Positions 1 through 29,699 of a stretch of DNA of 64,000 nucleotides are shown in pieces; the stretch's first letter is position 1; each line of letters opens with the position of its first letter. The stretch lies in NCBI RefSeq assembly GCF_020745735.1, contig NW_026867526.1, positions 62,001 to 126,000 of the forward strand, given 5' to 3'. A program made the position numbers and the translations under genes. The notes beneath the pieces were generated by a model. It was not told the DNA's origin. It did not search any database and worked only from the letters and a program-made list of their open reading frames with translations. This DNA comes from Hemiscyllium ocellatum (taxonomy: Eukaryota).

Positions 1-1400
1 CAGTCTTCAAGTGCCGTCTGGTCTTGCCATGTTCAGAAAGGATTCCATTCTGGTAATGATCACCCTTTGGTTTTGAAGACATCAGTTGTATCTGCAGTGT
101 GATATTGTCAGAGATGACTAGATGGGTGTACAGGAATTCTAAAATCAGAACGGATTCTTCCTTTGGTCGAACTCACCATGGTGTACCCACCGTAGGGAGT
201 TGGCTGCAGGCATTAACCACTTGATTGCACGTATGCTGTTCCAACTTGTAATCCCATGCACTCAGAATAAAAGCTCACGTCTGATTTAGACATGAAGCAA
301 AAAGTGGGATGGTCCTGTCTTCATCGGGTAGCCTTAGTAGAGGTTTGTGGTGCATTACTACATCAAACGTATGTAAATGAATGTCTTGGTTGGATGTATT
401 TTCTCACACAAAAGATTATCACCAACCTTTCCTTCTCACTCTGGATGAATTTTCATTTGGCATCAGCCAAAGCCTGGTCAGCATATACCACTGGGCAGTT
501 CTCTCTGCTGACTGTCGGTGAGCCAGCAGTAACTGGAAACTGTGTGGGGAGACTTCACATGTCAGCACCACATCTCACTGGGGAGTAGTCTGTGCAAAAA
601 TTTTAAATGCCGATAGCTGCTTTTTCAATTCCTGAAAGGCTACTTCTTGGTGACTCGGCTACTTGCAAAGTTGGCTCTTTCTCAATAGCAAATCTAAGCT
701 GCCAGTATGAATGCGAGCTCATGACAGAATTTTCCGTAATAATTCACTAAGCCAAGGAAAGTCTAAAGCACTGATACAGATGTGGGAACTGAGGAACCCT
801 TGGATACCCTCATGTTATTGTTGGATGTGCATAGCCCACTGTTGTTGATGCTGACGCTCAATGAGTTCAGTTGGGATGCCTTGGAACCCACCTGCTTTTT
901 TACCTTTCTAAGGATTTGGAGAAACATTAAACACATTTTTATTGATCATCACTGTATCTAGCACATCATTGAGATAAATATCGACCTGCAGTAGACCTTG
1001 TAAAATGTTCTCCCTCATTCCCTGGAACTGTTCACCGCCTGATGATACCCTAAAAGACAGGCAGTCAAGTATATTGTTTCCATCCCTCATGGGTATTAAT
1101 TGGTACATGTTTATGGGAATCCTCACTGAATCACAATGGCACATTCACACAGCTCATTTCCAGCGTCATGACAAACAGTTCCCATGCACTTTTGCGTAAA
1201 ACTCCTCAATGCAATTTACTGGTTATTTATCTGGCTTCAAAAACTGGCTCAACATTTCTTTCAAATTGCCACTAATGCGACTCAACCAATAATGGGTATC
1301 AACAGTACTTTCCTATGGCAAACTACGGTAGTTTGATGATCCCTCAGATCTCCAGGCACATGCCTCTACGTTTGCACACAAGGTGAATGGCACTGGTGGT
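1..1400 (-). mobile_element. Ty3/gypsy (K02A2.6-like) pol remnant: RT, RNase H, start of integrase; frameshifted
   Basis: ORF 908-1144 includes the YLNDVL and QFQGMRENILQGL RT-like motifs. It is collinear with the other pol copies in the array. Confidence 0.8.
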
Positions 1401-1994
1401 GTGGACCTATTCTGTCAAATGGCCTGCCTCCACACTGTAGAAGTTCTGTCAACCCCTGGGACTCTCGGTTCAACAACAATCCACAGGCCCTGCCACTACC
1501 TGTGTAGGTCTCACACTGCAACATTTACCAATATGCAACAATTTGCATTTATCAAAATTAAACTCCAGCTGCCAATCCTCACCAACCATGCATCCCATAT
1601 TCTCACCCAAATCCTTTACATAACTGACAAACGGCATTCGACCCAGCACCGATTCCTGCAGTCATCACAGGCTTCCAATCTGATAAACAACCATCACTGC
1701 CTGCATCAGACACTCCCAGAACAGGCACAAGACCGTGACATATGCTCTGCTCTTTCAAAAAGAACCTAAAGCGACTAGTTGGACAAAAAAGACACTATTA
1801 TTCTGTAGAAAGACATAATCAAAACCTGGTTCTGCTGGACTCTGTACCCACCAATCACTCAGGGGCAGGGTCTACAAGGGGTAACATAAAAACAAACTCA
1901 AACATATCATAGAAAACAAACAATAAATAAACAGCTCTGATGAGAAGTCATCAAGATTCAAAATCTTAGCTTGCTCTCTCTCATGGATGTTGTG

Positions 1995-2650
1995 AGGTAG
2001 ATTCAGAGCAGTTTTGTGGTGAAGACACAGCAACGCTCGACACCGAGTTAAAGGGGGAATGGATGGATGTTGAGGCCGCTTGTTATTACGGTGATTTGCA
2101 CGTTGTTGTGGATCAGGTGACATATGGTTACAAACTTCATGCTGCATCGAAAGTGGAGAGGAATGCTGTACAAGTGCTTTCTGACTGATGGTGTCAAAGG
2201 CCTTTGTAAGGTTGAAGAAGGCCCTACACAGTCATGCTTAATGTGCCCATCTGAGGCCGAAAGTCACACTGAAACTGCAGAGGGAGTTCATCAGCCATAA
2301 GGAAGAGACAGTTGAAAAGTACCTTGGTGATGAATTGCCCAGTGGTCAACATCAGGGACATTGTCCTGAATGTACCACAGTCTGACATGTTCCATTATTT
2401 GAAAATACTCCTGACTTTGGCATCTGGGAGCTCTCCTGGGATGCTCTCCTCCTTCCAGAGAAGGCAGACAAGGATATTCAGCTGCACTGGAAGCTCGGTG
2501 CCTCCGCAGTTCGAGGCTTGAGAGGGAATACCATTTGCAACTGCAGCCCTGTTCTCGAGCTGGAGGACCACTTTCTCTATTTGATCCAAGGCTTAGATAT
2601 TGCTGAACTCCATGCATGTAACATGTTATGGCATGCACTCCAAAATTCTC
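1995..2650 (-). mobile_element. RTE-clade LINE reverse-transcriptase fragment (array component)
   Basis: LLWKEESIPGELPDAKVRSIFK (ORF 2395-2589) matches the RTE pre-RT motif W..E.IP.EL.DA.I..IFK. Confidence 0.75.
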
Positions 2651-2829
2651 CATGGGCAAAGTACATGACACTGACCTAGCCTTCATAGAGACAGCTCCTC
2701 AAGTGAGCAGATCGCCGACACATCTGCCAGTCAGGTCTCCCTGATTAGACCAGGTGAACAGCCTCAACCTGGAAATATATATTCAATGAGGTCCACTCAT
2801 TGACTGGGTCCCAGTCATTACTTCCATCC

Positions 2830-5350
2830 CCATCTAATTCCTGGGACAAAGGCCCATTCTCTTTCCTGCAACATATCATGAAACATTTTCCCATGAGGTC
2901 CACTTCTTCGGACTCGGGGGTGCATTCCGCCGCCTTGGGCTGGACTGTGGCCCACTTCTTGCATCTCAGAAGAAATGTATCTTCTTCTACAGGTGGTAAT
3001 GGCGTCAATGCTGCAACATCTGCCACGTCCATCTCACTCTCAGAGGAATCTTCCACACTGAGTGGAGGAGGGGGAGAACCCACAGGTACGGACATCCTTG
3101 CTGAATGTTGTGAGGGGCTGGGATGTTGTGCTCCTGACCACGTCTTGAGGTTGCAGCAATCATGTGATCCTCAAAATTGTTCAGGACTTCTTGTGTGACA
3201 TAAGCATTGTACATCTTGTGACCTGACTTCATTTTGAACACATTCAGGGCCATTCCCACCGATTCAACAGCACATTTTGTGCCATGAAATAAACTGCCTC
3301 ACACAAAGAGGGGTTTTGTGACTGGCATTGGCCTTCCTGGTGCCGTGTCACTCTCCCCACAACATCCGAGAAGATCCAATTTAACTTGGAGGCTTCTTCA
3401 CATTAGCAATTCTGGTGGCGTTGTCACTGCAGTTGTGTGAGCGGTGTTTCTATAATTAGAGAGAAAGTGGGACAGTTTGACATCCAGTGAAGTTGTCGGC
3501 TGTTTACTTAACTTTGCCCTCAATGTTTGGACTGTACTTTCCACCATACAATCAGACAACACATGCAGTTGTCACTACATGCGAATGCCATTCGATTTTA
3601 GGCAATACACTAAACTACCTGCTGGCAAACGAATACCCTTTATCTGTGACCGACATCCTTAAAGTACAGATCCCACAAAATGGACTGGCACATTCGACGT
3701 GTAACTGAGCTAAGGTTCTACCTGGTCAGTGCCATGAAAATGAGGCACTGCTGGTGACAATTTCTGTCCTTCTTGGCATTGTGGATACTGCCCCACCAAC
3801 ATGGCTGCATCGGCATCCAATTCTGGCTATCAGACATAACCTCTCACCAACATCTTCATTTTGGAAATCATAGAATGAGTCTGGTGGAGTTTAGCTGGTA
3901 TCTGACAATGACCTTTGTCTGTAACAAACACGTTTGCTCCCCACATAAGCGTGCCATCTTCAACAGTCATCTGGTCTTGCCAGCTCCAGAAAGAATTCCA
4001 TCCTGGTTGTGATGATCGTCATCAGTTTCGAACACCACCAGTGGTTCTTGTTTCATTAGGACAGGAAATTCTTGTATCTACAGTGTGATATTGTCAGAGG
4101 TGAGCAGAAAGAATGCAGAACGGTTAAAACTAAAATGAACTCTTCCTTTGGTGGCACGCGCCATGGTGACTTCAGGCATTAACCAGGTGACTGCAGATAT
4201 GGGGTTCCTAGTTGTAAATCCATGCACTCAGAATAAGAGCTCACTTCTGAACTTAACCTCAAGCTGGAAGTGGGATAGCCCTGCCTTCTTCAGGTAGCTC
4301 GAGCAGGGTTTTGTGATGCATTACTACATCAAAGATATGTGCGGGAACCTATTGGTTGAACTTTATCACTCAAAAGGTTACTGCCAAACATTCCATCTCC
4401 ATCTGGATGCATTTTCATTCAGCATCAGCCAAACTCTGGGAAGCAAGTACGACCAGGCAATCCCTTCTGTCGGTGAGCTAGCAGTAACTGGATACCAGAT
4501 GGTGATGCTTTGTACGTCAGTGCCACATCTGACTGGAGATCATTCGCTGCCAAGGCATTAAATGATGATAGCTGCTTTTTCAATTCCCATACGGGTTCTT
4601 CTTGGCGATGTGAATATTTGCAAAGCAGGCCCTTCTCAATAGCAAATCTCAGCTGCCAAAATGGAGGCCAGGTGATTACACAATTTTCTCCGTAATAATT
4701 CACCAACCCAAGGAAAGACTGAAGCTCCAATGCAGACGGAGGAGCCGATGAACCCTTGGTTGCCCTTGCTTTATCTTTCAATCTGTCTTACCCACTTGTC
4801 CATGCAGTAGCTCAATTACGTCACTTCGGGTGCCTTGGAACACATTTTCTTCCTTCCTAAAGGTCTTGGATAAACATAAAATGATCTTTATTGATCTTCC
4901 CTGTGATTAGCAATTCTTCATAGAAATAGGGACCATGGGTAGACCTTGTAAACAGTTCTTGGCCATTCACTGGAACGATTCATTGGCTGATGATATCCTT
5001 AAGCAAATGCAGTCAAATACAATGGTTACACCCTTTATGGGTATGAGCTGTAGCATATTTATGGGAATCCTCATTGAAGCATAATGCTACATTCATATGA
5101 CACATATCCAGCTTTGTAAAGGACAAGGCATCTGCGGGTTTCCAGACAAGTCCTCAATGTGATGCATCAGTTATATACCTGGCTTCAAAAATTCCCTCAT
5201 CAAATCTTTAAAATCTCCACATAGGCAAATTGACACATAATGGGTTCGAACAGCACTGCACATAGGGCACACTGCAGTGGTTTGATCATCGTTAGCTTTC
5301 CAGGCTCTTGATGTGTGCCTCTACTTTTGCACGTAAGGGAAATGAGACTG
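2830..5350 (-). mobile_element. Ty3/gypsy pol remnant (RT-RNH-integrase), degenerate
   Basis: Minus-strand fragments include LQSFLGLVNYYG (RT/RNH connection, ORF 4425-4781) and YVKILKI/ANLPM near the RT N-terminus. No gag, protease or LTR was recognised. Confidence 0.8.
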
Positions 5351-7810: not shown

Positions 7811-8366
7811 GGATGCACGTCAACAATTTACATGTACATAGGACATGACACTGACCTAGCCTTCGCACAGATGTCTCCTCGAGTGAGCAGAACCCCTGAC
7901 ACACCTGCCAGTCAGGTCTCCCTGCTTGGACCAGGTGAAGTGCCCCAACCAGGGGAATTATATTTACTGAGGTTCACTGGGTGACTACGTTCCAATCACT
8001 ACCTCCATCCACCTCTCAGCCCTGGGACATGGTCCCATTCTCTTTCCTGTCACTTTCCTGAGTCATTTTCCCACTCGGTCCACTTCCTTGGACTCTGGCT
8101 TGACCAATGGTGCCATGTGCTGTACTGTAGCCAACTTCTTGGGTCTCAGAAAAGATTTACCTTCTTCTGCTGGTGGGTAAAGGTATCAAGGCTGAGACAT
8201 CTGCCATCTGTCCATCTCGCCCTCAGAAGTTTCTTCCACGCAGGGCGGACTGGGAGAACCCACAGGTTCGGACAGCCGTGCCAGATGCTCTGAGGGGCTG
8301 GGTATGTTTTGAGACTGGCTACTTGAGAATTTGCAGCTGTCATGTTATCTGCACGTTTGTTCAGGA

Positions 8367-9290
8367 CATAGAACAGAGACCATTAGAGCGCAGCACAGGT
8401 CCTTCAACCCTCGATGTTGCGATGACTTGTGGAACCAATCGGAAACCCATCTATCCTGCACAATTTCGTTTTCATCCATAGTTTATCCAATGATCATTTA
8501 AATTCCCATAAATTTGGTGAGTCTACAACAGTTGCAGGCAGGGCATTCCATACCCATACACCTCTCTGAGTAAAGAAACTACCTCTGACAACTGTCCTGT
8601 ATCAATCACTCCTCGATTTAAAGTTGTGTCTCCTCATGCGAGCCATCACCATCCGTTGAAAAAGACTCTCACTCTCCACCCTGAATCCTCTGATTACCTC
8701 AGATATTTCAATTAAGTCACCTCTCAACCTTCTTCTCTCGAATGAAAACAGCCTCAAGTCCCTCAGCCTTTCTTCAAAAGAACTTCCCTTCATACCAGAC
8801 AACATCCTAATAAATCGCCTCTGAACCCTTTCCAAACAGTCTGCATCCTTCCTATAATGCAGTGATCAGAAAAGCACACAATACTCGAAGAGTGGCCACA
8901 CCAGAGTTTTCTACAGCTGCAACATGACCTCATGGCTCAGAAACTCAATACCTCTACCAAGAAAAGCTAACATCGTATGCTTTCTTGACAGGCCTACCAA
9001 CCTGGGTGGGAAATTTCAGGGATCGATGTACTTGGTCACCAAGACATTCTACCAACTCCGAGGTCTCTCTGTTTGACAACACTCCACAAGCCCTACTATG
9101 AACTGTGTAAGTCTTGTCCTGTCCCTTTTACCTGAATGCACCACATTGCATTTATTAAAATTAAACTCTACCTGCCACTTCTCACAAACCATGCACCCTA
9201 TATTCTCATCCAAATCCTTCACATATATGACAAACGGCATTGGACACATCACCGATTCCTGTATTTATCACAAGCCTCCAGTCTGAAAAA
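8367..9290 (-). mobile_element. CR1 LINE 3' fragment. It is the long form of the internally deleted CR1 piece that recurs in most array units (about 1540, 5470, 12950, 17155, 18725, 23700)
   Basis: ERVQRRFIRMLSGMKGSSFEERLRDLRLFSFERRRLRGDLIE (ORF 8602-8835). FVIYVKDLDENIGCMVCEKWQVEFNFNKC shows a deletion spanning the FADD motif that the other copies share. Confidence 0.85.
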
Positions 9291-10319
9291 CAACATCCAT
9301 TATGTGCAACAGATTCTGTCCAAATACGCATCGTACCAGCACATACACTCTGCTCTTCCAAAACAGAAACAAAAGCTGCTTTCACTTTGTAAAACAAAAA
9401 AAAAGACACTGTTCCTCTCGGGAAAGACAGAAGGAAATAAACAATCGAAAATTGGCTCTCGCTGTGCCAACCAATCACTCGTGGGCATGGGCCAAACAGC
9501 ACCAAAATAAAAACAAAGTCAAGGTCATCAAATAAAAGACAACAAAAGAACAGCTCGGATGCGTGGTCTTCTCGTCACAAAATCTTAGTTTGCTCTCTCT
9601 CATGGATTATGTCTGACCCACTATGATCTCCAGCATTTGTTCATTTCAATGAAAATTTTTTTAAAAATCTGCTCTGCTTTGTTGAGATTGAACACTCCTG
9701 AGAAAGGAATCTGGGAATGGTTAAAAATCCCGAAGAAGGATTCCTGTTCATTTCAACCAAAAACAACTTACCGCTCACACTGATCCCCATCAAGGGTTTC
9801 TGGGATAGTGACATTGCAGGACTTCAATACGAGCCCCCTTGGCCTACAATTGGGCAGCTTCTCTGCGGTGAGGTCCTGCAGTGAGGTAGATTCAGAGCGG
9901 TTTTGTTGTAATGACATAGCCCCGCTCGACACGAGTTCAGAGGCAGAATGGGTCAGTGTTCAAGCTGTTTGTCATTAAGATGATCTACACATCGTTCCAG
10001 ATCTGGTGAGGGATGGCGGTGCACCTCTTGCATCTCAGAAAATGGTTACCTTTCTATAATCAAAGAGAAAGCGGGACAGTTTGGTATCCAGTGAAGTTGT
10101 CAGCTCTTTTCTTAACTTTGCCCTCAATATTTGGACTGTTCTTTCCGCCAGATAATTGGACAACGCATGCAGAGACTGCTCCTCAAATGAGCAGAACCCC
10201 TGACACAACTGCCAGTCAGATCTCCCTGCTTAGACCAGGTGAACAGCCTCAACCTGGAAAATTATGTTCAATGAGGTTCACTCGCTGACTACGTTCCAGT
10301 CATCAATTCCGTCTCGAAC

Positions 10320-12830
10320 TAATTCCTCCTTCTTGCACCATCTCTTAAGCCATTTTCCAACTAGTTCCACTTCCTCGGACTCCGGGCTGCATTCTGTCAC
10401 CATGTGCTGGACTGTGGCCCACCTCTTGTGTGTCAGAAGAAACTCATCTTCTTCTGTAGGTGGTCATGGTGTCAATGCTGCCACATCTGCCATGTCCATC
10501 TCACCCTCAGATGTTTCTTCCACACTGGGTGAAGGAGGAGAACCATCGGGTTCAGAGACCCTTGCTGAATGCTGTGAGGGGCTGGGTATGTTTTGCTCGT
10601 GACCACATCTTGAGGGTGCAGCAAACATGTGATCCTCACATTTATTCAGAACTTCTTGTGCGACCAAAACATTGTACATTTTGCGACCTGTCCTCACTTT
10701 GAACATATTTTTTACTCATTCAGTGTCATTCCCACAGTTTCAACAGCACGTTTTGTCCCATGAAGCAAACTTCTCACTCACAAAGAGGGGTTTTGTGGCC
10801 AGCATTGGCCTTCCTGATGGCGTTTCACCCTCCCCACAACGTCCGAGAAGATCCGATTTAGTCTGGAGTCTTCTTCGCATCAGCAATTCTGGTGGCGTTG
10901 TCACTGTAGTTGTGTGAGCGGTGTTTCTATGATCAAAGATAAAGAGGGACAGTTTGGTATCCAGTGAAGTTGTCAGCTGTTTTCTTTCCTTTGCCTTCAA
11001 TGTTTGGACTGTTCTTTTTGCCAGACAATTGGACAACAGATGCAGCTGTCACTACATGCCCAATGTCATTCGATTTTAGCCAATACTCAAAACTGCCTGC
11101 TGGCAAATGAATGCCCTTTACCTGTGCCCAACATCGTTACAAGTACAGATCCCACAAAACAGACTGACACAGTCAACGTGTAACTGAGCTAAGGTTCTAC
11201 CTGGTCAGTGCCATGAAAATGAGGCACTGCTGGTGACAATTTCTGTCTTTCTTGGCATTGTGGATACTGCCCCACCAACATGGCTGCATCGGCATCCAAT
11301 TCTGGCTATCAGACATAACGTCTCACCACCATCTTCATTTTGGAAATCATAGGATGAGCCTGGTGGAGTTTAGCTGGTATCTGACAATGACCTTTGTTTG
11401 TGACAAACACGTTTGCTCCCCATATTAGTCTGCCATCTTCAATGGTCATCTGCTCTTGCCATCTCCAGAAAGAATTCCATCCTGCTTGTGATGACCCTTT
11501 CGTTTTGAACACCACCTGTGATTTTTGCTCAGCAAGGATGGGAAATTCTTATATCTACAGTGTGACATTGTCAGAAATGACTAGAAGGGAAGCAGAAAGT
11601 TTAAAACTAAAATCGACTCTTCCTTTGGTGGAAAACGTCATGGTGACTTCAGGCATTAACCAGGTGACTGCAGGGATGGTGTTCCAATTTGTAAATCCAT
11701 GCACTCACAATAAGAGCTCACTTCTGAACTTAACCTGAATCTGCAAGTGGGATAGCCTTGCCTTCTTCAGGAAGCTCTAGCAGGGTTTTGTGGTCCATTA
11801 CTACATTAAAAATTTGTGTAGAAACTTTTGATTGAACTTGGTCACACAAAAGCTTACTGCCAAACATTCCATCTCCATCTGGACGCATTTTCATTCGGCA
11901 TCAGCTGAGAAGCACATACAGTGAGGCGGTTGTATTTGTTGGTGAGTCAGCAGTAACCATACACCAGATGGTGAGGCTTCCCATGTCAGTGCCACATCTC
12001 ACTGGAGATCACTCTGTGCCAAGACATTAAACAATGATAGCTACTTTTTCAATACCAATAAGAGTTCTTCTTGGGGACACGAGTATTTGCAAAGCTGGCC
12101 CTTTCTGAATATCACATCCTAGCTGCCAAAATGGAGGCCTGTTGATGACAGAATATTCCATAATAATTCACCAACCCAAGGAAAGACTGAATCTGCGATG
12201 CAGACATGGGAGCCAGTGAACCCTTGGTTGCACTTGCTTTCCCTTTCAATGTGTGTAACCCACACGTCCATGCTGAAGCTCAAGAAGGTCACTTGGGGGT
12301 GCCTTGGAACATATTTCTTTCCTTCCTAAGTTCTTGTTCAAACATTAAATAATATTTATTGATCTTCCTAGTGATGAGCAAACTTTCAGATAGATAGGGA
12401 CCATGGGTAGACCTTGTAACTGATCTCCGCCATTCACTCGAACGATTTACCGGCTGATGATATCCCCAAAGAAAGGCAGTCAAGTACAGTGGTTCCACCC
12501 TTTATAGGTATTGATTGTAGCATATTTGTGGGAATCCTTACTGAAGCTCAATGCCACGTTCATCTGGCCCATATCCAGTTTGGTCAAGGACAGGGCACCT
12601 GCAGTTTTGCAGACAAGTCCTCAATGTGATGGATTGGTGATATACCGGGCTTCAAAAATTAGCTCATCAATTCTTTAAATCTCCACGCAGGCGAACTGAC
12701 ACATAATGGATTCGAGTAGCACTGTACATAGGGCACACTGTAGTGGTTTGGTCATCGCTTAGCTTTCTAGGCTATTGATTTGTGCCTCTACTTTTGCACA
12801 TAAGGGAAATGGGACTGATACTCTGGGCCT
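10320..12830 (-). mobile_element. Ty3/gypsy pol remnant (RT-RNH-integrase), degenerate
   Basis: SNCLAKRTVQTLK...YRNTAHTTT...PPELLMRRRLQTK is the integrase core end (ORF 10740-11036). LHQAHPMISKMKMVVRRYV is the integrase H2C2 zinc-finger region (ORF 11309-11515). Confidence 0.85.
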
Positions 12831-13649
12831 GTTGTGCAAAATAGCCTACTTCCGCACTGTAGAGGTTCTGTCAACTCCTAGGACTCTCTGTTTGTCATCA
12901 CTCCACGGGCCCTTCCAAAAGTGGTCTTGCCCTGTTACTCTTACCAAAATGCAACATTTTGCAAGTATCTCTCCCGGCCAATCCTAACAAACCATGCATC
13001 CTAAATTCTCATTCAAATCCTTTACATATATGACAAATGGCATGGACACATCACCAATTGCTATATTCATCATGATCCTCCAGTCTGAAAAACAACACCA
13101 GACAGATACTGCCCGAACAGGCATCACACCAGGACATACACTCTACTCTCCCAAAACATAAGCAAACTCCGCTTTCACTTTGTAAAACAAAAAAGACTGT
13201 TTTTGTCTCTCTATTCTGTTCCTCCAGAGAAAGACAGAAGGAAATAAACAATCAAACATTGCCTCTCCTGGATTCAGTGCCCAACAACCACTCGTGGGCA
13301 TGGGCCACACGGCGCCAAAATAAAAATAAACTCAAGGAAGAAAAAGAAAACAAACAACAAATGAACAGCTCAGATGCGGTGCCATCTCGACACAAAGTCT
13401 TAATTTGCTCTCTTTCATGGATCATGTCTGACCCACTGTGATCTCCAGAATTTGTTCCTTTCTACTAGGTAAATCAATTCGCTCTGCTCTGTCATGATTG
13501 AACACTCCTGGAAAGAAACAACAATGGTTTGAAATCCAGAGAAAGTACACATGCTCATTTCAATTGAAAATAACTTACCACTCACAATGACACCCATCAA
13601 GGGTTTCTGGGACAGCGACATTGCAGGACTTCAATACACCCGCCTTGAC

Positions 13650-14350
13650 TCAAGTGGGCAGCTTATCTGTGATGAGGTCATGCTGCGAGGCAGCTTCTTA
13701 GCAGTTTGTGGTGATGACACAGCCCTGCTGGGCACTGGGTAAAAGCGGGAATGGACGGGTACTGAGGCTGTTTGTTATTACAGTGACTTGCATGTTGTTG
13801 TGGATCAGGTGACGGATGGTGACAAACTTCATCATGCATCGAAAGCAGAGAAGAATGCATCCCAAGTGCTTTCTGATTGATGGTACCAAAGGCCTTTGTA
13901 AGGTCCAAGAAGGCCATTTACAATCGTGAAAATTATGCACAATGTGCACCTCTGTGGCTGAAGGTCACACTCAAACTTCGGACGTAGTTCATCAGCCATA
14001 AGGAGGAGACAGTTGAAAAGGACCTTGGTGATGAATTGTCCAGGGGTCAACATCAGGGACACTCCCCTGTCCGTACCACAGTTTGACATGTTCCATTGTT
14101 TGAAAATTTTCCTGACTTTGGCATATGGCAGCTCTCCTGGGATGCTCTCCTCCTTCCAGAGAAGGCAGACAAGGATATTCAGCTGCACTGGAAGCACAGT
14201 GCCTCTGCAGTTCTATGCTTGAGGGGGACTACCATTTGCAACTGCAGCCTTGTTCTTCAGCTGAAGGACCGCATCCTCTGTTTCGACCAAGGTTTAAGTA
14301 TTCCTAAACTCAGTGCATGTAATATGCTGTGGCATGCACTCCAACATTTT
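13650..14350 (-). mobile_element. RTE-clade LINE fragment (array component)
   Basis: MAFLDLTKAFGTI (ORF 13678-13917), AQQGCVI, and WKEESIPGELPYAKV (ORF 13832-14197). Confidence 0.8.
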
Positions 14351-14539
14351 CCACGTGGATAGTACGTGACACTGACCTAGCCTTCATAGAGACTGCTCCT
14401 CGAATGAGCAGAACCCCTGACACATCTGTCAGTCAGATCTCTCTGATTAGCCGAGCTGAACAGCCTCAACCTGGAAAATTATATTCAATGAGGTTCACTT
14501 GCTGACTGCGTTCCAATCATCAATTCCGTCCACATCTAA

Positions 14540-17040
14540 TTCCTCTTTCTTGCACCATCTCTTGAGTCACTTTCCCACTCGGTCCACTTCCTCGGACTCC
14601 GCGCTGCAATCTGCCACCATGTGCTGGACTGTGGCCTTCCTCTTGCGTCTCAAAAAGAAATTATCTTCCTCTGCAGGTGGCAATGGTGCCACTGCTGCAA
14701 CATCTGCCATGTCCATCGCACCCTCAGAGGATTCTTCCACACTGGGTGAAGGACAGGTTTGGACAGCCTTGCTGAATGTTGTGAGGGGTTGGGTATGTTT
14801 TGCCCCTGACCATGTCCTGAGGTTGCAGCAATCATATGATCCTCACAATTGTTCAGGACCTCTTGTGTGACCTAAGCATTGTACATCTTGCGACCTGTCC
14901 TCACTTTGAACATATCCTTTACCTATTCGGGGCCATTCCCACAGTTTCAACAGCACATTTTGTCCCATGAAGTAAACAGCCTCACGCACAAAGAGGGGTT
15001 TTGTGGCCGGCATTGGCCTTCCTGATGGCGTTTCACTCTCCCCACAGCATCCAAAAAGATCACATTTACCTTGGAGTCTTCTTCGCATCAGCAAATCTGG
15101 TGGAGTTGTCACTGCAGTTGTGTGAGCGGTGTTTCTATAATCAACAGAAAGTGGGACAGTTTGGTATTCAGCGATGTTGTCAGCTGTTTTCTTAACTTTG
15201 TCCTCAATATTTGGACCGTTCTTTCCACCAGACAATCGGACAATGGATACAGCTGTCACTACATGCCCAATGTCATTCGATTTTAGCCAATACTCAAAAC
15301 TGCCTGCTGGCAAATGAATGCCCTTTACCTGTGCCCAACATCGTTACAAGTACAGATCCCACAAAACAGACTGACACAGTCAACGTGTAACTGAGCTAAG
15401 GTTCTACCTGGTCAGTGCCATGAAAATGAGGCACTGCTGGTGACAATTTCTGTCTTTCTTGGCATTGTGGATACTGCCCCACCAACATGGCTGCATCGGC
15501 ATCCAATTCTGGCTATCAGACATAACGTCTCACCACCATCTTCATTTTGGAAATCATAGGATGAGCCTGGTGGAGTTTAGCTGGTATCTGACAATGACCT
15601 TTGTTTGTGACAAACACGTTTGCTCCCCATATTAGTCTGCCATCTTCAATGGTCATCTGCTCTTGCCATCTCCAGAAAGAATTCCATCCTGCTTGTGATG
15701 ACCCTTTCGTTTTGAACACCACCTGTGATTTTTGCTCAGCAAGGATGGGAAATTCTTATATCTACAGTGTGACATTGTCAGAAATGACTAGAAGGGAAGC
15801 AGAAAGTTTAAAACTAAAATCGACTCTTCCTTTGGTGGAAAACGTCATGGTGACTTCAGGCATTAACCAGGTGACTGCAGGGATGGTGTTCCAATTTGTA
15901 AATCCATGCACTCACAATAAGAGCTCACTTCTGAACTTAACCTGAATCTGCAAGTGGGATAGCCTTGCCTTCTTCAGGAAGCTCTAGCAGGGTTTTGTGG
16001 TCCATTACTACATTAAAAATTTGTGTAGAAACTTTTGATTGAACTTGGTCACACAAAAGCTTACTGCCAAACATTCCATCTCCATCTGGACGCATTTTCA
16101 TTCGGCATCAGCTGAGAAGCACATACAGTGAGGCGGTTGTATTTGTTGGTGAGTCAGCAGTAACCATACACCAGATGGTGAGGCTTCCCATGTCAGTGCC
16201 ACATCTCACTGGAGATCACTCTGTGCCAAGACATTAAACAATGATAGCTACTTTTTCAATACCAATAAGAGTTCTTCTTGGGGACACGAGTATTTGCAAA
16301 GCTGGCCCTTTCTGAATATCACATCCTAGCTGCCAAAATGGAGGCCTGTTGATGACAGAATATTCCATAATAATTCACCAACCCAAGGAAAGACTGAATC
16401 TGCGATGCAGACATGGGAGCCAGTGAACCCTTGGTTGCACTTGCTTTCCCTTTCAATGTGTGTAACCCACACGTCCATGCTGAAGCTCAAGAAGGTCACT
16501 TGGGGGTGCCTTGGAACATATTTCTTTCCTTCCTAAGTTCTTGTTCAAACATTAAATAATATTTATTGATCTTCCTAGTGATGAGCAAACTTTCAGATAG
16601 ATAGGGACCATGGGTAGACCTTGTAACTGATCTCCGCCATTCACTCGAACGATTTACCGGCTGATGATATCCCCAAAGAAAGGCAGTCAAGTACAGTGGT
16701 TCCACCCTTTATAGGTATTGATTGTAGCATATTTGTGGGAATCCTTACTGAAGCTCAATGCCACGTTCATCTGGCCCATATCCAGTTTGGTCAAGGACAG
16801 GGCACCTGCAGTTTTGCAGACAAGTCCTCAATGTGATGGATTGGTGATATACCGGGCTTCAAAAATTAGCCCATCAATTCTTTAAATCTCCACGCAGGCG
16901 AACTGACACATAATGGATTCGAGTAGCACTGTACATAGGGCACACTGTAGTGGTTTGGTCATCGCTTAGCTTTCTAGGCTATTGATTTGTGCCTCTACTT
17001 TTGCACATAAGGGAAATGGGACTGATACTCTGGGCCTGTT
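14540..17040 (-). mobile_element. Ty3/gypsy pol remnant; 15250 onward is a near-identical copy of 11043 onward
   Basis: Identical translated ORFs occur at a constant offset of 4207 bp (11309/15516, 12289/16496, 12775/16982). Confidence 0.85.
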
Positions 17041-19340
17041 GTGCAAAATAGCCTACTTCCGCACTGTAGAGGTTCTGTCAACTCCTAGGACTCTCTGTTT
17101 GTCATCACTCCACGGGCCCTTCCAAAAGTGGTCTTGCCCTGTTACTCTTACCAAAATGCAACATTTTGCAAGTATCTCTCCCGGCCAATCCTAACAAACC
17201 ATGCATCCTAAATTCTCATTCAAATCCTTTACATATATGACAAATGGCATGGACACATCACCAATTGCTATATTCATCATGATCCTCCAGTCTGAAAAAC
17301 AACACCAGACAGATACTGCCCGAACAGGCATCACACCAGGACATACACTCTACTCTCCCAAAACATAAGCAAACTCCGCTTTCACTTTGTAAAACAAAAA
17401 AGACTGTTTTTGTCTCTCTATTCTGTTCCTCCAGAGAAAGACAGAAGGAAATAAACAATCAAACATTGCCTCTCCTGGATTCAGTGCCCAACAACCACTC
17501 GTGGGCATGGGCCACACGGCGCCAAAATAAAAATAAACTCAAGGAAGAAAAAGAAAACAAACAACAAATGAACAGCTCAGATGCGGTGCCATCTCGACAC
17601 AAAGTCTTAATTTGCTCTCTTTCATGGATCATGTCTGACCCACTGTGATCTCCAGAATTTGTTCCTTTCTACTAGGTAAATCAATTCGCTCTGCTCTGTC
17701 ATGATTGAACACTCCTGGAAAGAAACAACAATGGTTTGAAATCCAGAGAAAGTACACATGCTCATTTCAACTGAAAATAATTTATCACTCACACTGAACC
17801 CCATCAAGTGTTTTTGGGACAACAACAGTGCAGGACTAAAACAAAAGCCCCCTTGGAGTAAATGTGGGCAGCTTGTCGGTGGAGTGGTCCTGCAGCAACT
17901 TAGGTTCAGGAGTGTTGTGGTGATGACACAGCCCTGCTCGCCACCAGTTCAAAGGGGCAAAGGGCAGGTGTTGAAGCCATGTCATGATGATGACATCTGT
18001 CATTGTGGACCAGGAGAAGGTTGGTGACAAAGTTCATGCTGTAACTAAAATGGTGAAGAACACTTCAAAAATGCTTCCTGATTGATGGTGTCAAACGCCT
18101 TTGTAAGGTCGAAGAATGCGATATGCAGCAGTGAAAATCATGTCCATTGTGCTCCTCTGTGACAGAAAGCGATACTGAGTCTCCGGGAGGAGTTCCTCAG
18201 GCACTGGGATGAGAGAGTTGAACATGAGAGTTATATTTACTGAGGTTCACTGGGTGACTACGTTCCAATCACTACCTCCATCCTCCTCTAAGCCCTGGGA
18301 CATGGGCCCATTCTCTTTCCTGTCACTTTCCTGAGTCATCTTCCCACTCGGTCCACTTCCTCAGACTCTGGCTTGACCAATGGTGCCATGTGGCCCACTT
18401 CTTGCGTCTCAGAAAAGATTTATCTTCTTCTGCTGGTGGGTGAAGGTGTCAAGGCCGAGACATCTGCCATCTGTCCATCTCGCCCTCAGAAGTTTCTTCC
18501 ACACTGGGCAGACTGGGAGAACCCACAGGTTCGGACAGCCCGTGCCAGATGTTCTGAGGGGCTGGGTATGCTTTCTTGACAGGCCTACCAACCTGGATGG
18601 GAAATTTCAGGGATCAATGTTCATGGCCACCAAGATATTCTGCCAACCCCTAGGTCTCTCTGTTCGACAACACTCCACACGCCCTACTATGAACTGTGAA
18701 AGTCTTGTCCTGTCCCTTTAACCAAAGTGCAACATATTGCATTTATTAAAATTAAACTTGACCTGCCATTTCTCACAAACCATGCATCCTATATTCTCAT
18801 TGAAATCTTTTACATAAATGAAAAATGGCATTGGACCCGCATCCATTCCTGTATTCACCACAGGCCTCCAGCCTGAAAAACATCCCTCACTGCCTGCAAC
18901 AGACGTTCCCAGATCAGGCACCACATTGCGGCATACACACTGCTTTTAAAACAGAAACTAAACCTGCTTTCAATTTCTAAAATAAAACAAAACATACTAT
19001 TCCTCTGGGCAAAGTCAGAAGGAAATAAACAATCTCAAACTGGCTCTCCCTGGCCTCAGTCCCCACCAAGCACTCGTGGGCAGGGGCCACAAGGGGCCAA
19101 TATAAAACTAACCTCAAGCAAATCACAGAAAGCAAACAATAAATGAACAGCTCTGATGAGGAGACATCTCGACACTAAAACTTAGCTTGCTCTCTCTCAT
19201 GGATGCTGTCTGACCCACTGTGATCTCCAGCATTTGCTCTTTTCAATGAAATAAAAAATGCTCTCTGCTTTGTTGCTATGGAACACTCCTGGGAAAGGAA
19301 CAATACTTGTTAAAACCCAGAGGTCCTGCAACTGCTCACA

Positions 19341-23210: not shown

Positions 23211-24589
23211 TCATGTGGTACTGGTTGTGTGGACTCAACAGGCCAAATGGCCGGCTTCCGCATTATAGAGGTTCTATCAAACCTTAGGTTGCTCTTCGGC
23301 AATTCTCCAGATGCCTTACCATTAACTGTGAAAGTCTTGCCTTGTCCAGCTAAGCAAAATGGAACATCTCACATTTATTAAAACTAAACTCCATCTGGCC
23401 CACTTGATCAGGATACATTTGGAATCTTTGATCACCTACTTCACTGTCCACTATACGGCAAACTTGGTGACATCTGCAAAATCACTAAACACAGAGTTAC
23501 AGAGATGTATTACATGGAAACAGGCTCTTCAGCCCAACTCAATATGCCAACCACATATTCTAAATGTATCCAGTCCCACTTGCCAGCACTTGGCTCATAT
23601 CCATCAAAACTCTTGCTGTTCGTATTTCCATCCTGATGCCTTTTAAATATTGCAGTTGTACCAGCCTCCACCACATCCTCTGGCAGCTTGTTTCATACGT
23701 GCAACCATGTTTCCTATATTCTCAATGCTAATCCATTTACAAAAATGACAAATGGCAATGGACCCAGTGCCAGTTCTCTTATTCATCACAGGTCTCCAGT
23801 TTGATCAACAATCCTCCACTCTTCTAAAACCAAAGATGTAAAAGGAAAGAAACCAAGAACACCTGATATTTCCTGCATCAGATAATCCCAAGACAGGCAC
23901 AGCACCGGGTGAAACACTCTGCTCTTTCAAGACTAGGTGGGGCCCAATGTTGGAGTGGGGTCAACAAAGCTAAAAATCGCTCAACACATTATCATCCACC
24001 ATGTTCATTTGGAAGAACTACCAGCAGCGTTCCAAAAAAATAGAATTTCCAAACAAACATTTGGATGAACCTGGTGATTTTTTTAAACTCTGCTACTTCA
24101 AAACAAGAATTAAAGCAACTATCAGTGTGTCAACCAAAAATGAAGACACAATGACTCTAGGGAACGGCAAAAACAAACACACACACAAAAATTGGCTCAC
24201 TGTTGACAATGTCTGCAACAACCAGTTTTAGGCAGTGGCCAAACGGGGGCCAAAATAAAAATAAACTCAAGCAAATATAAGAAAACAAACGATAAATGAA
24301 CAGCTCTGATGAGGAGTCAGCTAGACTCAAAGTCTTAGCTTGCTCTCTCTCTCATGGATGCTGTCTGACCTGTTGCAACCTCCAGCATTTATTCTTTTCA
24401 ACTGAATAAATGAGTCCTCTCTGCGCTGTCATGATTGAACACTCCATGGAAAGGAACACTGATGCATAAAATCGAGAGGAAGTACAGCTGTACATAACTT
24501 ACAGCTCACACTGATCCCCATCAAGAGCTTCTGGGACAGCGACAATGTAGGACTACAATTAAACTCCCCTTGGGTCAACAGTTGTCAGC

Positions 24590-25050: not shown

Positions 25051-25067
25051 CTCCCCCGCCACCCACC

Positions 25068-25193: not shown

Positions 25194-25494
25194 TCAGACT
25201 CTAGCTTGGTTACTGTCGCCACGTGCTGGACTGTCAACCACCATTTGCATCTCAGCAGAAATGTGTCTTCTTCTGAGGTTGGTAATGACATCAAGGCTGC
25301 CACATTTGCCCTCAAATCTTCTACACTGGCAGGATGAGGAGAACCCACAGGCAAGAACATCCTTGCCACATGTTCTGAGGAGCTGGTTATGCCGTGCTCT
25401 TGGCCACTTGCGGGTTACAGCTATCATGAGATCCTCACATTTGTTCAGGACCGCCTCTCCAACATCATGGGACCTGCCCTTAACTTCGACCATG

Positions 25495-25724
25495 AGCTGA
25501 AAAATGTGTTGCTGGAAAAGCGCAGCAGGTCAGGCAGCATCCAAGAAGCAGGAGAATTGACGTTTCGGGCATAAGCCCTTCTTCATTACTGATTCCTGAA
25601 GAAGGATTATGTCCGAAACGTCAATTCTCCTGCTCCTTGGATGCTGCCTGACCTGCTGCGCTTTTCCAGCAACACATTTTTCAGCTCTGATCTCCAGCAT
25701 CTGCAGTCCTCACTTTCTCCTTTT
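25495..25724 (+). mobile_element. 230-bp Penelope-derived mini-element with an inverted 5' copy and a 12-bp target-site duplication
   Basis: ACTTCGACCATG occurs at 25483-25494 and 25725-25736. The arms 25495-25585 and 25597-25686 are about 95% reverse-complementary. Confidence 0.85.
25591..25627 (+). ncRNA. Minimal type I hammerhead ribozyme motif (Penelope type)
   Basis: CUGAAGA 25596-25602, stem II GGA(U)/(G)UCC, GAAA 25615-25618, then C-GUC cleavage triplet with an ACGU palindrome; stem I is imperfect. Confidence 0.6.
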
Positions 25725-27039
25725 ACTTCGACCATGCCCCTTCCCCATGCATGCCATTCCAATGGTTTAAACAGCACATTTTGTCCAATGTAGTAAACTG
25801 CCTCACGCGCAAAGAGGGGTTTTGTGGCCGGCATTGAATTTCCTGATGCAGTTGAACATTCACATTCATATTCACATTCCAATCCATTACCGAAATGAAA
25901 AATGGCATTACACCCAGCATCAATCCCTGCATTTGTCACAGTCCTCCAGTCTGCAAAACAACCCTCCATTCTTTTCAAACCAAAGATGCAAATGAAAAAA
26001 TAAAACCAAGATCCCCTGATACTGCCTGCGTCAGACATTCCTGGAACAGACACATCACCAGGAAAAATGGTGTGCTCATTCAAAACAGAAATTAAACTGC
26101 TTTCACTTTGTTTATTTCTTTCTGGCTTTCCACAGAGCAATAGTGCCTTTTTTGTTTAACAAGCAAAAATTGGCTTCCCCTGCCCCACCAACCACTTGTG
26201 GGCAGGGGCTACAGGGGGCCAAAATAAAAATATACTCAAGCAAATTAAACAACACATGAACAGCTCTTATGAGGAGTCATTTGGTCTTGGAATACTAGCT
26301 ACCCTCTCTCGTGGATGTTCTCTGACCTGCTGTGATCTCCAGCATTTGTTCTTTTCAACCAAATAAAAAACTAAACAATTAAACGTTCTGCTCTGTCGTA
26401 AATTGAAAACTCCTGGGAAATGAAGAATAACGGTTTAAAATTCAGAGAAAGTACACCTGCACATTTCAACTAAAAATAAGATATCACTCACACTGATCCC
26501 CACTAAGAGCATCTGGGACAGCAATGGTTCAGAACCACAACTAAAGCCCCCTTGGATCAAACATGGGCAGCTTGTCGGAAGTGAAGTTGTGCAGCGAGGT
26601 AGATTCAGAAGTGTTGCGGTGATGACATACCCTGCTCGACATCGGTTCAGAGGGCGAGTGGGTAGGTGTTGAAGCTGTTTGTCATTTTGATGAATTATAC
26701 GTCATTGTGGAGCAGGTGAAGGATGGTGACAAACATCATGGTGCAACGAAAGCAACGAAGAACGCTCCAGAAATGCTTCCCGATTGATGATGTTAAAGGC
26801 CTTTTTAAAGATCCCAGAAGGCCATATACTGCAGTGAAAATCATATTCAATGGATCACTCTCTGGCCGAAAACCGCATTGGGATCCTGGGGGGGCTCAGC
26901 CGAGGGGAGGGGAGGTGAGGGGAGGGCGATGCGATACGTGACGTGACGTGACGCGATGTGCAGAGACGCGAGGCGAGGCGATGCGATGGCATAGTCAAAA
27001 TATAACTGAATCCAGGTTATATCTGGCCAGTCAATTCTT

Positions 27040-27912
27040 GTCGGTGGAGTTGTGGATAGTGAGGAAGGAAGTGGTAGGTTACAGCAGGATATAGATAAGT
27101 TGCAGAGCTGGGCGGAAATGTGGCAAATGGAATTCAATGTAGCTAAGTGCGAAGTCGTTCACTTTGGTAGGAATAACAAGATGATGGATTACTGGGCTAA
27201 TGGTAGGCTACTTGGTAGTGTGGATGAGCAGAGGGATCTTGGTGTCCATGTACACAGATCTCTGAAAGTTGCCACCCAGGTAAATAGTGCTGTGAGGAAG
27301 GCATATGGTGTACTGGGCTTTATTGGCAGAGGAATTGAGTTCCGGAGTCCTGAGGTCATGTTGCAGTTGTATAAGACTCTGGTGAGGCCTCATCTGGAGT
27401 ATTGTGTGCAGTTTTGGTCGCCATACTATAGGAAGGATGTGGAAGCTTTAGAACGAGTGCAGAGGAGGTTTACCAGGATGTTGCCTGGAATGGTAGGAAA
27501 ATCTTATGAGGAAAGGCTGAGGCACTTGGGGCTGTTCTCATTGGAGAAGAGAAGGTTTAGGGGAGATCTGATAGAAGTGTATAAGATGATTAGGGGTTTA
27601 GATAGGGTAGATACTAAGAACCTTTTACCGCTAATGGAGTCAGGTGTTACTAGGGGACATAGCTTTAAATTAAGGGGTGGTAGGTATAGGACAGATGTTA
27701 GGGGTAGATTCTTCACACAGCGGGTTGTGAGTTCATGGAATGCCCTGCCCGTATCAGTGGTGAACTCTCCTTCTTTGTGGTCATTTAAGCGGGCATTAGA
27801 TAGGCATTTGGAAGTTATTGGGCTAGTATAGGTTAGGTAGGATTCGGTCGGCGCAACATCGAGGGCCGAAGGGCCTGTACTGCGCTGTATCCTTCTATGT
27901 TCTATGTTCTAT
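27040..27912 (+). mobile_element. Young 5'-truncated CR1 LINE (ORF2 C-terminus open for 259 aa, (TTCTATG)n tail)
   Basis: ORF 27052-27831 WQMEFNVAKCEVVHFG...RPHLEYCVQFWSP; very similar to 58385-59255. Confidence 0.95.
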
Positions 27913-27914
27913 GT

Positions 27915-28930
27915 CCCTATTGGCACTCAGGAGACTGCCCCACCAACATGGCTATCACAGCATCCAATCCTGGCCACCAAACATAAATTCTTATCAACAT
28001 CCTAATTTTGGAAATCACAGGACGACCCTGCTGGAGCTGAAGAAGGGCTTATGCCTGAAACGTCGATTCTCCTGCTCCTTTGATGCTGTCTGACCTGCTG
28101 CGCTTTTCCAGCAACACATTTTTCAGCCTTGCTCCCCATATTAGTATGCAGTTTTCATTGGCCATCTGATCTCACCAGATCCACAAACGATTCAATCCTG
28201 CTTATGATGATCTTTTCGTTTCTAACACTGCAGTTGTTTCTTTTTTCTCACCAGTACGGGACCTTGTTCTAATCGGAGATTGTCAGAGATGACTGGAAGG
28301 GTGTGCAGAAAGTTTAAAACCAGAACAGACTTTTCCAGTGTATCCATCATTGGGAGTTGGCTTCAGGCATTAACCACTTGACCGCCTGCTTGGTGTTCCA
28401 ACTTGTAATTGTATGCAGTTAATAACAGCTAACGGCTGAATTTGACCAGAACCTAGAAGTGGGATGGCCCTGTCCTCTTCAGCTCATCTTAACAAGTGTT
28501 TGGGTCCATTACTCTTTCAAATGTATGCATAGAAAGGTATTGACTGAACTTTCTCACACAAAGATTCCTGCCAAACTTTGTTTCTCTATGCGATGCATCT
28601 TCATTTGGCATCAGCTGAAGTCTGGGAAACGTACACTAATCGGACAGTCCTCCCTGTTGAGCCATCGGTGAGCCAGACACTGGTACAGTATCGGAACGCT
28701 GCACATGTCAGCGACACATCTCACTGGGGATTATTCTTTGCCAAGACTTTAAACAATGAAATCCGTGTTTTCACTTGCCAAAAGGCTACTTCTTGGCAAC
28801 GTCACTATTTGTAAGGCTATCCCTTTCTGAATAGCATACCTAAGCTGCCAAAATGGAGGCTCGGTCATTTTCCGTAACAATTCACTAACCCAAGGAAAGA
28901 TCAAAGCTCAGATGCTGACATGGGAACAGA
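27915..28930 (-). mobile_element. Partial gypsy integrase/RNase H remnant interrupted by a Penelope-derived mini-element
   Basis: Collinear by eye with 11250-12200 (for example 'gactgccccaccaacatggct' and 'ggcattaaccacttgac'). Confidence 0.7.
28037..28127 (+). mobile_element. Penelope-derived mini-element with an intact hammerhead catalytic core but no stem I
   Basis: CUGAAGA-A-GGGC-UUAU-GCCU-GAAA-C-GUC at 28037-28064. It replaces about 45 bp of the gypsy integrase sequence. Confidence 0.7.
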
Positions 28931-29699
28931 GGAACCACAGGGAGGAGACAGTTGAGAAGGATTTTGGCAATGATTGACGTAAGGGATATTCCCCAGTAGT
29001 TACCACAGTCAGACATGTTCCATTTCTTTGAAAATATTCATGGTTGTGGCATCTGGGAGCTCCCCTAGGATATTCTACTCTGTCCAGACAGTCTTGTCAA
29101 TTTCGTCCAAGGCTTGGGTATTGCTTATAAGTTTTGGTCTGCAGACTGCTATGTGGACAGTAGATGACAATGACCTAGTTTTCACAGAGTCAGCTGCTTG
29201 AATGAGCAGTCAGGACTCCCTGATTGGACCAGATTCATAGCCCCAACTTGGGAAATTCTGTTCAATGATGTTCAGCTGGCTGACCTCGCTCCAATAATTA
29301 CTTTCCTCCACCTCGAAGTCCTAAGATTTATGCCTATTCTTCTTCCTGTGGCATCTCCTGGGATGTTTTCCCAACAGGTCGGGTTCCTCAAACTCTGGCT
29401 TGGATAGTGCTGGCGCATACCAGACTGTGACTGCCTCTTGCCCCTGGAGCATCTGACCAGACATTCATCATCGTCTGCCAGCAATGTTGTGACAGCTGCT
29501 GTGTCCATCTTTCCCCTCAGAGGTTTCTTCGACACTGGGAGGATGGGGAGAATTAACAGGTTTTGACAGCCTTGCCAGATATTCGGAGTGACCGGGTACA
29601 GTTTGCTCTTGGCCATTTGGAGAGGATGTGGTACTCTCTACATTGGTGGGACCAAACAAAGTAAAATAAGGGTCAGCCTGGCCCCTACTCACCATCCAT

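What the first reader, a model, noticed from the sequence alone, without database searches (positions are those of the whole stretch)
1..29620. 30-kb head-to-tail macrosatellite built from a fixed mosaic of four retroelement families, downstream of a shark IgM cluster
Seen in sequence: about 9 units repeat the order gypsy integrase-RNH-RT, SINE/CR1 tail, CR1 piece, spacer X, Penelope end, spacer Y, RTE piece. Anchor spacings are about 3.9, 1.0, 2.7, 3.8, 4.2, 1.6, 5.2 and 2.0 kb. The copies share the same inter-family junctions and the same internal CR1 deletion (DLDENIG.MV joined to WQ.EFN). They therefore descend from one composite ancestor and are not independent insertions. Most copies look roughly 75-85% identical (estimated by eye), so the array is old yet persistent. 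Established: shark IgH genes occur as many duplicated miniclusters. Inference: this unit may be an inter-cluster spacer and a recombination substrate that drives cluster birth and death. I do not recognise it as a described repeat.
Basis: partly seen in the sequence, partly recalled or inferred. Interest (0 to 1): 0.75.

Follow-up and report, generated by a model that had tools for sequence, protein, structure and literature searches.

The report
Old tandem array of dead-retroelement mosaic
The first 29.6 kb of this shark window really is a head-to-tail array of about eleven whole or partial copies of a 4.2-kb unit stitched from dead retroelement pieces, an already described kind of repeat, and nothing I could test ties it to the antibody gene 30 kb away.

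Summary
Window 1-29619 is a same-strand tandem array with a period of about 4217 bp. It has 11 whole or partial units, and 90% of its bases have a direct paralogue inside the array.

The unit is a mosaic, all on the minus strand:
- a Ty3/gypsy pol fragment running RT-RNase H-integrase (significant);
- the RT part of a CR1-like LINE (significant);
- a second reverse-transcriptase piece (weak evidence, clade unknown).

The "Penelope end" was not confirmed.

The inter-fragment junctions are shared between copies, so one composite was amplified as DNA. Three refinements:
- Unit H lacks the "shared" CR1 deletion.
- Units D and G are a derived variant in which a later CR1-like insertion replaced 2.2 kb of gypsy.
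- Units E and F share a 2521-bp tract with one mismatch, which points to recent gene conversion.

The Ig link is not supported. The array holds no Ig sequence and lies 30 kb from Cmu4. Its parts are high-copy dispersed repeats in this species and a related one.

Composite satellite monomers from "transposon graveyards" are described in the literature. The scan also noted a look-alike array 633 kb away in this genome. Verdict: real, old, ordinary.

The parts
1..29619 (+). Tandem array of 11 whole or partial units with a period of about 4217 bp. It runs off the window start, and its right end falls at unit position about 450.
10171..14387 (+). Reference unit E (4217 bp)
10281..12840 (-). Ty3/gypsy pol fragment in unit E, running RT, RNase H, integrase and C-terminal tail. 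It is 5'-truncated inside or just before RT. The same fragment is present in A, B, F, H, I (remnant) and J.
   Evidence: Representative search: 31 hits at E<=1e-3, best 4e-10. Those hits carry RVT_1, RT_RNaseH_2, Integrase_H2C2 and rve. tblastn of P0030 gives E 1.8e-19 in E/F and 7e-25 in H over aa 177-902.
12841..13150 (-). Piece of a CR1-like LINE RT in unit E, matching about aa 506-598 of the window's own 816-aa LINE ORF. The internal deletion of about aa 541-579 is shared by A, B, D, E, F and G.
13680..14212 (-). Second reverse-transcriptase N-terminal piece, not alignable to the CR1-like ORF.
   Evidence: Pfam RVT_1 E 0.057 on the unit C copy 7377-7670. Atlas score 0.95 to RVT_1 clusters. 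No significant match to the CR1-like ORF.
8363..9044 (-). 3' half of a CR1-like LINE in unit D, in frame with the resident CR1 piece. It replaces gypsy u483-2695, and its (TTCTATG)n tail abuts u482.
18567..18636 (-). 70-bp remnant of the same LINE segment in unit G (D-type variant). It has the same junction to u2696.
11043..13563 (+). 2521-bp tract of unit E matching unit F (15250-17770) with one mismatch. The flanks are only 72-90% alike.
   Evidence: Contig depth is 25.8 inside the tract and about 10 in the flank (table 8).
15250..17770 (+). Partner tract in unit F
23353..23770 (-). Unit H's CR1 piece. It keeps the FADD-containing segment (about aa 546-596) that is deleted in the other units. 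It is interrupted by a 235-bp insert at 23467-23701 that resembles 51257-51457.
27040..27911 (+). Young 5'-truncated CR1-like LINE inserted between units I and J. It is 93% identical in DNA to 58385-59256.
10051..10172 (+). Stray 122-bp copy of the integrase region (u754-875, 89% identical) between units D and E
60133..63603 (-). Context only: IgM constant exons. CH4 with the secretory tail is at 60133-60585, CH3 at 60968-61357 and CH2 at 63193-63603.
   Evidence: Pfam C1-set, E 3e-22, 6e-11 and 5e-18

Best explanation
A stretch of nested, already truncated retroelements was duplicated in tandem as DNA. It held a gypsy pol fragment, a CR1-like LINE RT piece and a second RT piece, all on the same strand. 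Duplication was most likely by unequal crossing-over or replication slippage. The resulting array of 4.2-kb units has since decayed neutrally.

Later events are recorded in the units:
1. An internal deletion in the CR1 piece arose after unit H's lineage split off. It then spread to A, B, D, E, F and G.
2. A new CR1-like LINE inserted by target-primed reverse transcription at unit position 482. Its cDNA joined the resident CR1 piece 2.2 kb upstream and removed the gypsy part. This created the D-type unit, which was then copied to give G.
3. Patches were exchanged between units: C-D to F-G at 88-95% identity, and E-F at 99.96%.
4. Further deletions occurred, and a young LINE inserted at 27040-27911.

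Shown: the array, its make-up, the shared junctions, the variants and the near-identical tract. Inferred: the mechanisms and the lack of function.
For: - Array and phase.
- Gypsy pol on the minus strand of six units, always with the same 5' truncation next to the CR1 piece.
- CR1 piece with one shared deletion junction.
- H keeps the undeleted segment and also has gypsy. By parsimony the gypsy-bearing form is therefore ancestral and D/G is derived.
- In D the LINE reads in frame from the resident piece to its own 3' end (294 aa, E 2e-62). Its microsatellite tail meets the target at a GTTCT microhomology.
- D's u3110-3650 is sister to gypsy-bearing unit B (support 100/99).
- The 2521-bp E/F tract has sharp edges.
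- Summed contig depth varies about 70-fold along the unit in both species, so the parts belong to dispersed families of very different abundance.
- No tRNA or Rfam family, and no long ORF.
- The kind is described in PMC12628747.
Against: - The mechanism of the first duplication leaves no readable trace. The left end of the array lies outside the window.
- Identity of D's LINE to the young family steps only from 63% (resident part, 97 nt) to about 73% (new part). That is weak support for a chimeric origin.
- Absence of function is assumed, not tested. No RNA or small-RNA data were examined.
- All three coding fragments share one orientation, which a piRNA-source reading would also predict.
Confidence: 0.8

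Rival explanations
1. One reading: the array is the spacer between shark IgH miniclusters and acts as a recombination substrate that drives cluster birth and death.
For:
- The units do exchange sequence.
- Earlier unchecked notes mention a look-alike array 633 kb away (s1-228460) and another decayed array downstream of an IgM cluster on another piece (s1-240091).
Against: - There is no Ig-like sequence in the array.
- About 30 kb of unrelated LINE and Penelope-like DNA separates it from Cmu4.
- The second array is not known to sit beside an Ig cluster.
- TE-derived arrays occur elsewhere in this genome away from Ig genes (s1-147051, unchecked).
- Units are mostly 65-78% alike, which makes them poor substrates for homologous recombination.
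Confidence: 0.07
2. The array is a uni-strand source of small RNAs (a piRNA-type cluster). The retroelement fragments all lie antisense to a plus-strand transcript.
For: Gypsy, the CR1-like piece and the second RT piece are all on the minus strand in every unit.
Against: - Three fragments sharing a strand is expected one time in four by chance.
- Later LINE insertions lie on both strands (8363-9044 minus, 27040-27911 plus).
- The fragments are 20-35% diverged from each other and old, so they are poor guides against active elements.
- No expression data were examined.
Confidence: 0.05
3. Assembly artefact: dispersed repeats were wrongly chained into a tandem array, or unit F is a false duplicate of unit E.
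For: The 2521-bp tract shared by E and F at 99.96% identity is the kind of feature mis-assembly can produce.
Against: - Units differ by 5-35% and carry unit-specific indels and inserts, which collapse or expansion would not create.
- Runs from three studies hold about half of the sampled words.
- A contig from a different study crosses a head-to-tail boundary at 14176-14496 (record 32).
- Contig depth inside the E/F tract is about 2.5 times that of the flank in run X1, as expected for two real copies.
Confidence: 0.03
4. The composite is itself a mobile unit, for example a chimeric retrocopy or a non-autonomous element, that inserted repeatedly at one site.
For: The parts are abundant genome-wide in two species.
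Against: - Units abut head to tail without target-site duplications or tails.
- Partial units stay in register.
- Depth along the unit is very uneven, so most genomic copies of the parts are not in composite form.
Confidence: 0.03

Closest known systems
Composite satellite DNA monomers derived from 'transposon graveyards' (review PMC12628747, DNA Res 2025)
   Same: The monomer consists of successive stretches similar to different, degraded TEs. A nested-TE locus was tandemised and propagated as DNA.
   Different: Here the monomer is long (4.2 kb) and only about 11 copies are seen. The array sits in a gene-bearing region rather than in demonstrated heterochromatin. The TE pieces are still long enough to identify by protein homology.
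Macrosatellites and other large tandem repeats of vertebrates (own knowledge: D4Z4, DXZ4 and similar)
   Same: Kilobase-scale units, head-to-tail order, and sequence exchange between units.
   Different: Classic macrosatellites are homogenised (more than 95% alike) and vary in copy number. This array is mostly 65-78% alike, and its copy-number variation was not tested.
LTR-retrotransposon tandem arrays of the form (LTR-internal)n, made by LTR-LTR unequal exchange (own knowledge).
   Same: A gypsy-derived sequence is repeated in tandem.
   Different: The unit holds only RT-RNase H-integrase, without gag, protease or a recognisable LTR. It also holds two non-LTR RT fragments, so it is not one element plus one LTR.
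LINE-1 insertion-mediated deletions and chimeric L1 insertions (own knowledge: Gilbert et al. 2002, Symer et al. 2002, Han et al. 2005)
   Same: The D/G variant has a LINE 3' end with its tail at the target. Its 5' side joins a resident homologous LINE fragment upstream, and the 2.2 kb in between is lost.
   Different: The element is CR1-like and in a shark. The event is inferred from old, decayed copies, and the identity step at the join is weak.

Membership tests
TE-derived composite tandem repeat (satellite or macrosatellite) | Head-to-tail copies in one orientation | tested here: met
   All paralogous matches of the unit within 1-29619 are on the same strand and in register.
TE-derived composite tandem repeat (satellite or macrosatellite) | The monomer holds segments from two or more unrelated TE families | tested here: met
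   Gypsy pol at E 7e-25. CR1-like LINE RT at E 2e-62 in D and 0.005 in A. A third RT piece is only weakly supported.
TE-derived composite tandem repeat (satellite or macrosatellite) | The same inter-fragment junctions recur in the monomers, showing a single origin | tested here: met
   The gypsy|CR1 junction is shared by A, B, E, F and H. The D-type junction is shared by D and G. The CR1 deletion junction is shared by six units.
TE-derived composite tandem repeat (satellite or macrosatellite) | Long arrays, high copy number or a heterochromatic location (classical satellite DNA) | tested here: inconclusive
   About 11 units are visible and the array continues beyond the window start. Contig data cannot give copy number. 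An unchecked note reports a second 27-kb array 633 kb away.
Macrosatellite (VNTR sense) | Copy number varies between individuals | not tested
LTR-retrotransposon (LTR-internal)n array | The unit equals one internal region plus one LTR of a single element | tested here: not met
   The gypsy homology covers only pol aa 177-902 of a 1072-aa reference. The rest of the unit holds non-LTR RT pieces.
Shark IgH minicluster or its duplication unit | Contains Ig gene segments, or is co-duplicated with the clusters | tested here: inconclusive
   No C-domain similarity in 1-30 kb, all E above 0.4. Co-duplication with other clusters cannot be tested without the rest of the genome.
   ORFs of the neighbouring Penelope-like copy (29950-31180) find nothing in the array by tblastn at E<=1. 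No unit tile matches it in DNA. This is a weak test because it used only one reference element.

The most novel reading that the evidence does not exclude
Arrays of this composite unit recur beside IgM miniclusters of hemiscylliid sharks and supply the homology at which clusters are duplicated or lost. If so, the array family would mark the breakpoints of IgH cluster turnover.
Probability: 0.07. Interest if true: 0.6.

Novelty: new member of a known kind. Interest (0 to 1): 0.25.

Why it matters
The array is a clean, readable example of how a nested-transposon locus becomes a large tandem repeat and then evolves. The order of events can be read from shared and unshared characters: an internal deletion, a LINE insertion that deleted 2.2 kb, patchwise exchange between units, and a very recent 2.5-kb conversion tract. 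That makes it useful as an illustration and for repeat annotation of shark genomes. It does not bear on an open question unless the Ig link were shown. Annotators of shark IgH regions should expect such arrays to confuse assembly and synteny.

Tried and rejected
- Tandem Repeats Finder found nothing because its longest period is 500. Self-BLAST was needed.
- Pfam on 20 stop-free pieces of the units gave no significant hit. Best were RVT_1 at 0.057 and RT_RNaseH_2 at 0.047.
- PDB sequence searches on three pieces gave only Ty3 RT/RNase H at E 0.23.
- The word-based protein search on the second RT piece found no candidate. Because of its length window and word index, this blank says little.
- BLASTP of the second RT piece against the window's CR1-like ORF was not significant.
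- The exact-sequence look-up of ten array ORFs found none in the collection. I therefore could not reach other genomic copies through protein tools.
- Penelope ORFs against the array: nothing.
- tRNA and Rfam scans: nothing.
- A motif I recalled for a shark SINE/LINE tail gave one chance-level match, so I dropped it.
- One findings look-up failed on coordinates beyond the window and one returned nothing.
- No paper on repeats flanking shark IgH clusters turned up. A search for L1 insertion-mediated deletion papers gave no citable hit, so that comparison rests on my own knowledge.
I used only stop-free pieces by reference.
- Depth figures from contigs are used only as a rough indication, as the tool warns.
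Full report
**What is there**

Self-BLAST of the window and mapping of a reference unit (10171-14387, 4217 bp) back onto it show that window 1 to about 29619 is one same-strand tandem array. Every match of the unit inside this stretch is direct and in register. No tile of the unit matches anything in 29.7-64 kb.

In all, 26,716 of 29,620 bases have at least one direct paralogue inside the array. The uncovered stretches are two LINE inserts and a few short unique segments. Tandem Repeats Finder reports nothing only because its longest period is 500.

The units, with u = position in the reference unit:

| Unit | Window | Content |
|---|---|---|
| A | 4-2686 | cut by the window edge; lacks u3253-3509 |
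| B | 2687-6810 | u1-4080 |
| C | 6812-7864 | u3150-4215 only |
| D | 7875-10172 | variant, see below |
| E | 10171-14387 | reference unit |
| F | 14388-18222 | u1-3847 |
| G | 18231-20423 | variant |
| H | 20450-25038 | oldest-looking |
| I | 25190-26870 | heavily deleted |
| J | 27912-29088 | heavily deleted |
| K | 29151-29619 | u4185 to about u450 |

**What the unit is made of**

Pfam and PDB sequence searches on stop-free pieces were too weak to name anything. I therefore ran the exhaustive representative search with one 120-aa piece (4428-4787, minus strand). It gave 31 hits at E<=1e-3, the best at 4e-10.

The long hits are Ty3/gypsy-type pol proteins with protease, RVT_1, RT_RNaseH_2, Integrase_H2C2 and rve domains. 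Used as tblastn queries, they align on the minus strand of units A, B, E, F, H and J. The best alignment is in H, covering pol aa 177-902 at E 7e-25. The gypsy part is therefore a 5'-truncated RT-RNase H-integrase fragment of about 2.5 kb.

The window's own intact 816-aa LINE ORF (56726-59173) has an endonuclease plus RVT_1. Its 3' end carries a (TTCTATG)n tail. I call it CR1-like on the strength of that tail, from my own knowledge. This ORF detects a short RT piece (about aa 506-598) next to the gypsy RT, again on the minus strand.

A third piece at u3530-4050, also on the minus strand, carries motifs typical of the N-terminal part of a reverse transcriptase. Its support is weak: Pfam RVT_1 at E 0.057 and an Atlas feature score of 0.95 to RVT_1 clusters. 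It does not align to the CR1-like ORF. It is probably a second non-LTR element, but the RTE label is untested.

The "Penelope end" was not confirmed. The ORFs of the Penelope-like copy that lies just past the array (29950-31180) find nothing in the array. There are no tRNA genes, no Rfam families and no long ORFs.

**One origin, then a readable history**

The gypsy|CR1 junction is the same in A, B, E, F and H. The CR1 piece carries one deletion junction, removing about aa 541-579 including the FADD motif. That junction sits at the same base in A, B, D, E and G, and in F, which is identical to E there.

Three details refine it.

*Unit H.* H keeps the segment that the others lack. Residues matching aa 546-596 are present at 23466-23353. 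They are interrupted by a 235-bp insert that resembles 51257-51457. The deletion therefore arose inside an array that already existed.

*Units D and G.* These share another structure:
- The gypsy part u483-2695 is absent.
- In its place the CR1-like LINE continues in frame from the resident piece to its own 3' end (294 aa, E 2e-62).
- The microsatellite tail meets unit position 482 at a GTTCT microhomology.
- G keeps only 70 bp of this segment, with the same junction.

H has gypsy and lacks the deletion, while D and G carry the deletion. D's u3110-3650 is also sister to gypsy-bearing unit B. The D-type is therefore derived.

The simplest account is a new LINE insertion at u482 whose cDNA joined the resident homologous fragment 2.2 kb upstream and deleted what lay between. 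This mechanism is known for human L1 (my own knowledge). The identity step at the join is only 63% against about 73%, so this remains an inference.

*Exchange between units.* Units exchange patches:
- C-D and the end of F plus G share a 2.9-kb block at 88-95% identity.
- E and F share 2521 bp (11043-13563 and 15250-17770) with a single mismatch. The flanks are 72-90% alike.
- In run X1 the contig inside that tract has depth 25.8, against about 10 for contigs in the flank. That fits two real copies rather than a false duplicate.

**Genome context**

IgM CH2-CH4 exons (C1-set, E down to 3e-22) lie at 60133-63603 on the minus strand. The array is thus downstream of this gene, but about 30 kb from CH4. 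The gap holds younger CR1-like LINE copies and a Penelope-like element. The array itself has no Ig-like sequence.

Runs from three studies of the source species hold about half of the sampled words of unit E. A related species holds about a twentieth. Laying contigs at 80% likeness put 2,400-4,000 pieces per run on 5.9 kb in both species. Summed depth differed about 70-fold between parts of the unit.

The parts therefore belong to dispersed repeat families of very different abundance. Most genomic copies of the parts are not in composite form. The contig data cannot count composite copies, and the tool warns against reading depth as copy number.

**The Ig idea**

I could not reach other loci of this genome. 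Exact look-ups of array ORFs and the word search were blank, and the collection scans do not cover sharks.

The scan's earlier notes (unchecked leads) report:
- a 27-kb array of a roughly 4.3-kb four-retroelement mosaic 633 kb beyond this window;
- another decayed array downstream of an IgM cluster on another piece;
- an unrelated retroelement-derived array between ordinary genes.

So the scan found this kind of thing before in this genome. Whether arrays of this unit accompany IgM clusters is open. With units mostly 65-78% alike, the array is a poor substrate for homologous exchange outside its few young tracts.

**Comparison with what is known**

A 2025 review describes exactly this class. 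It covers satellite monomers with successive stretches of similarity to several TEs, and proposes that they arise by tandemisation of degraded nested insertions in "TE graveyards" (PMC12628747).

This array is a long-unit, low-copy, well-preserved member of that class. It is not an (LTR-internal)n array, because the unit holds only part of pol plus non-LTR pieces.

**Verdict**

Single composite origin is supported. The four-family make-up is partly supported. The Ig role is not supported, though it is not excluded. This is a new member of a known kind, of modest interest.

Noticed in passing
window 56726-59256 (+): CR1-like LINE copy with an uninterrupted 816-aa ORF (partial endonuclease plus RVT_1) and a (TTCTATG)n 3' tail. 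It lies just downstream of IgM CH4. Related decayed copies are at 37191-39351 (-), 40730-43170 (-) and 47914-48690.
   Followed up: partly
window 29737-31180 (-): Directly after the array there are ORFs with Penelope-like motifs: an RPIVS-type RT motif and a Cys-rich GIY-YIG-like block. GC is raised to 0.52. Pfam gave no hit, so the label rests on motifs read by eye.
   Followed up: partly
window 25496-25585 and 28038-28127: A 90-bp inverted pair at 94% identity inside units I and J. There is a direct relative at 25073-25189 / 25597-25716 (86%). This is probably a small young element inserted twice.
   Followed up: no
window 26871-27911: The young LINE insert at 27040-27911 is flanked by unit positions that are not contiguous (about u3792 on the left, u1074 on the right). 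This insertion also coincides with a loss of about 1.3 kb of array sequence.
   Followed up: no
window 2748-3195, 10243-10599, 14460-14867: The gypsy C-terminal tail region (u~75-430) stays open in both strands for 119-146 codons in units B, E and F. Pfam finds nothing. This is probably a composition effect of a stop-poor stretch rather than a gene.
   Followed up: partly
window 32748-33182 (-): A 145-aa open stretch resembling a transposase-derived or hAT-like protein by eye. It has no Pfam hit.
   Followed up: no
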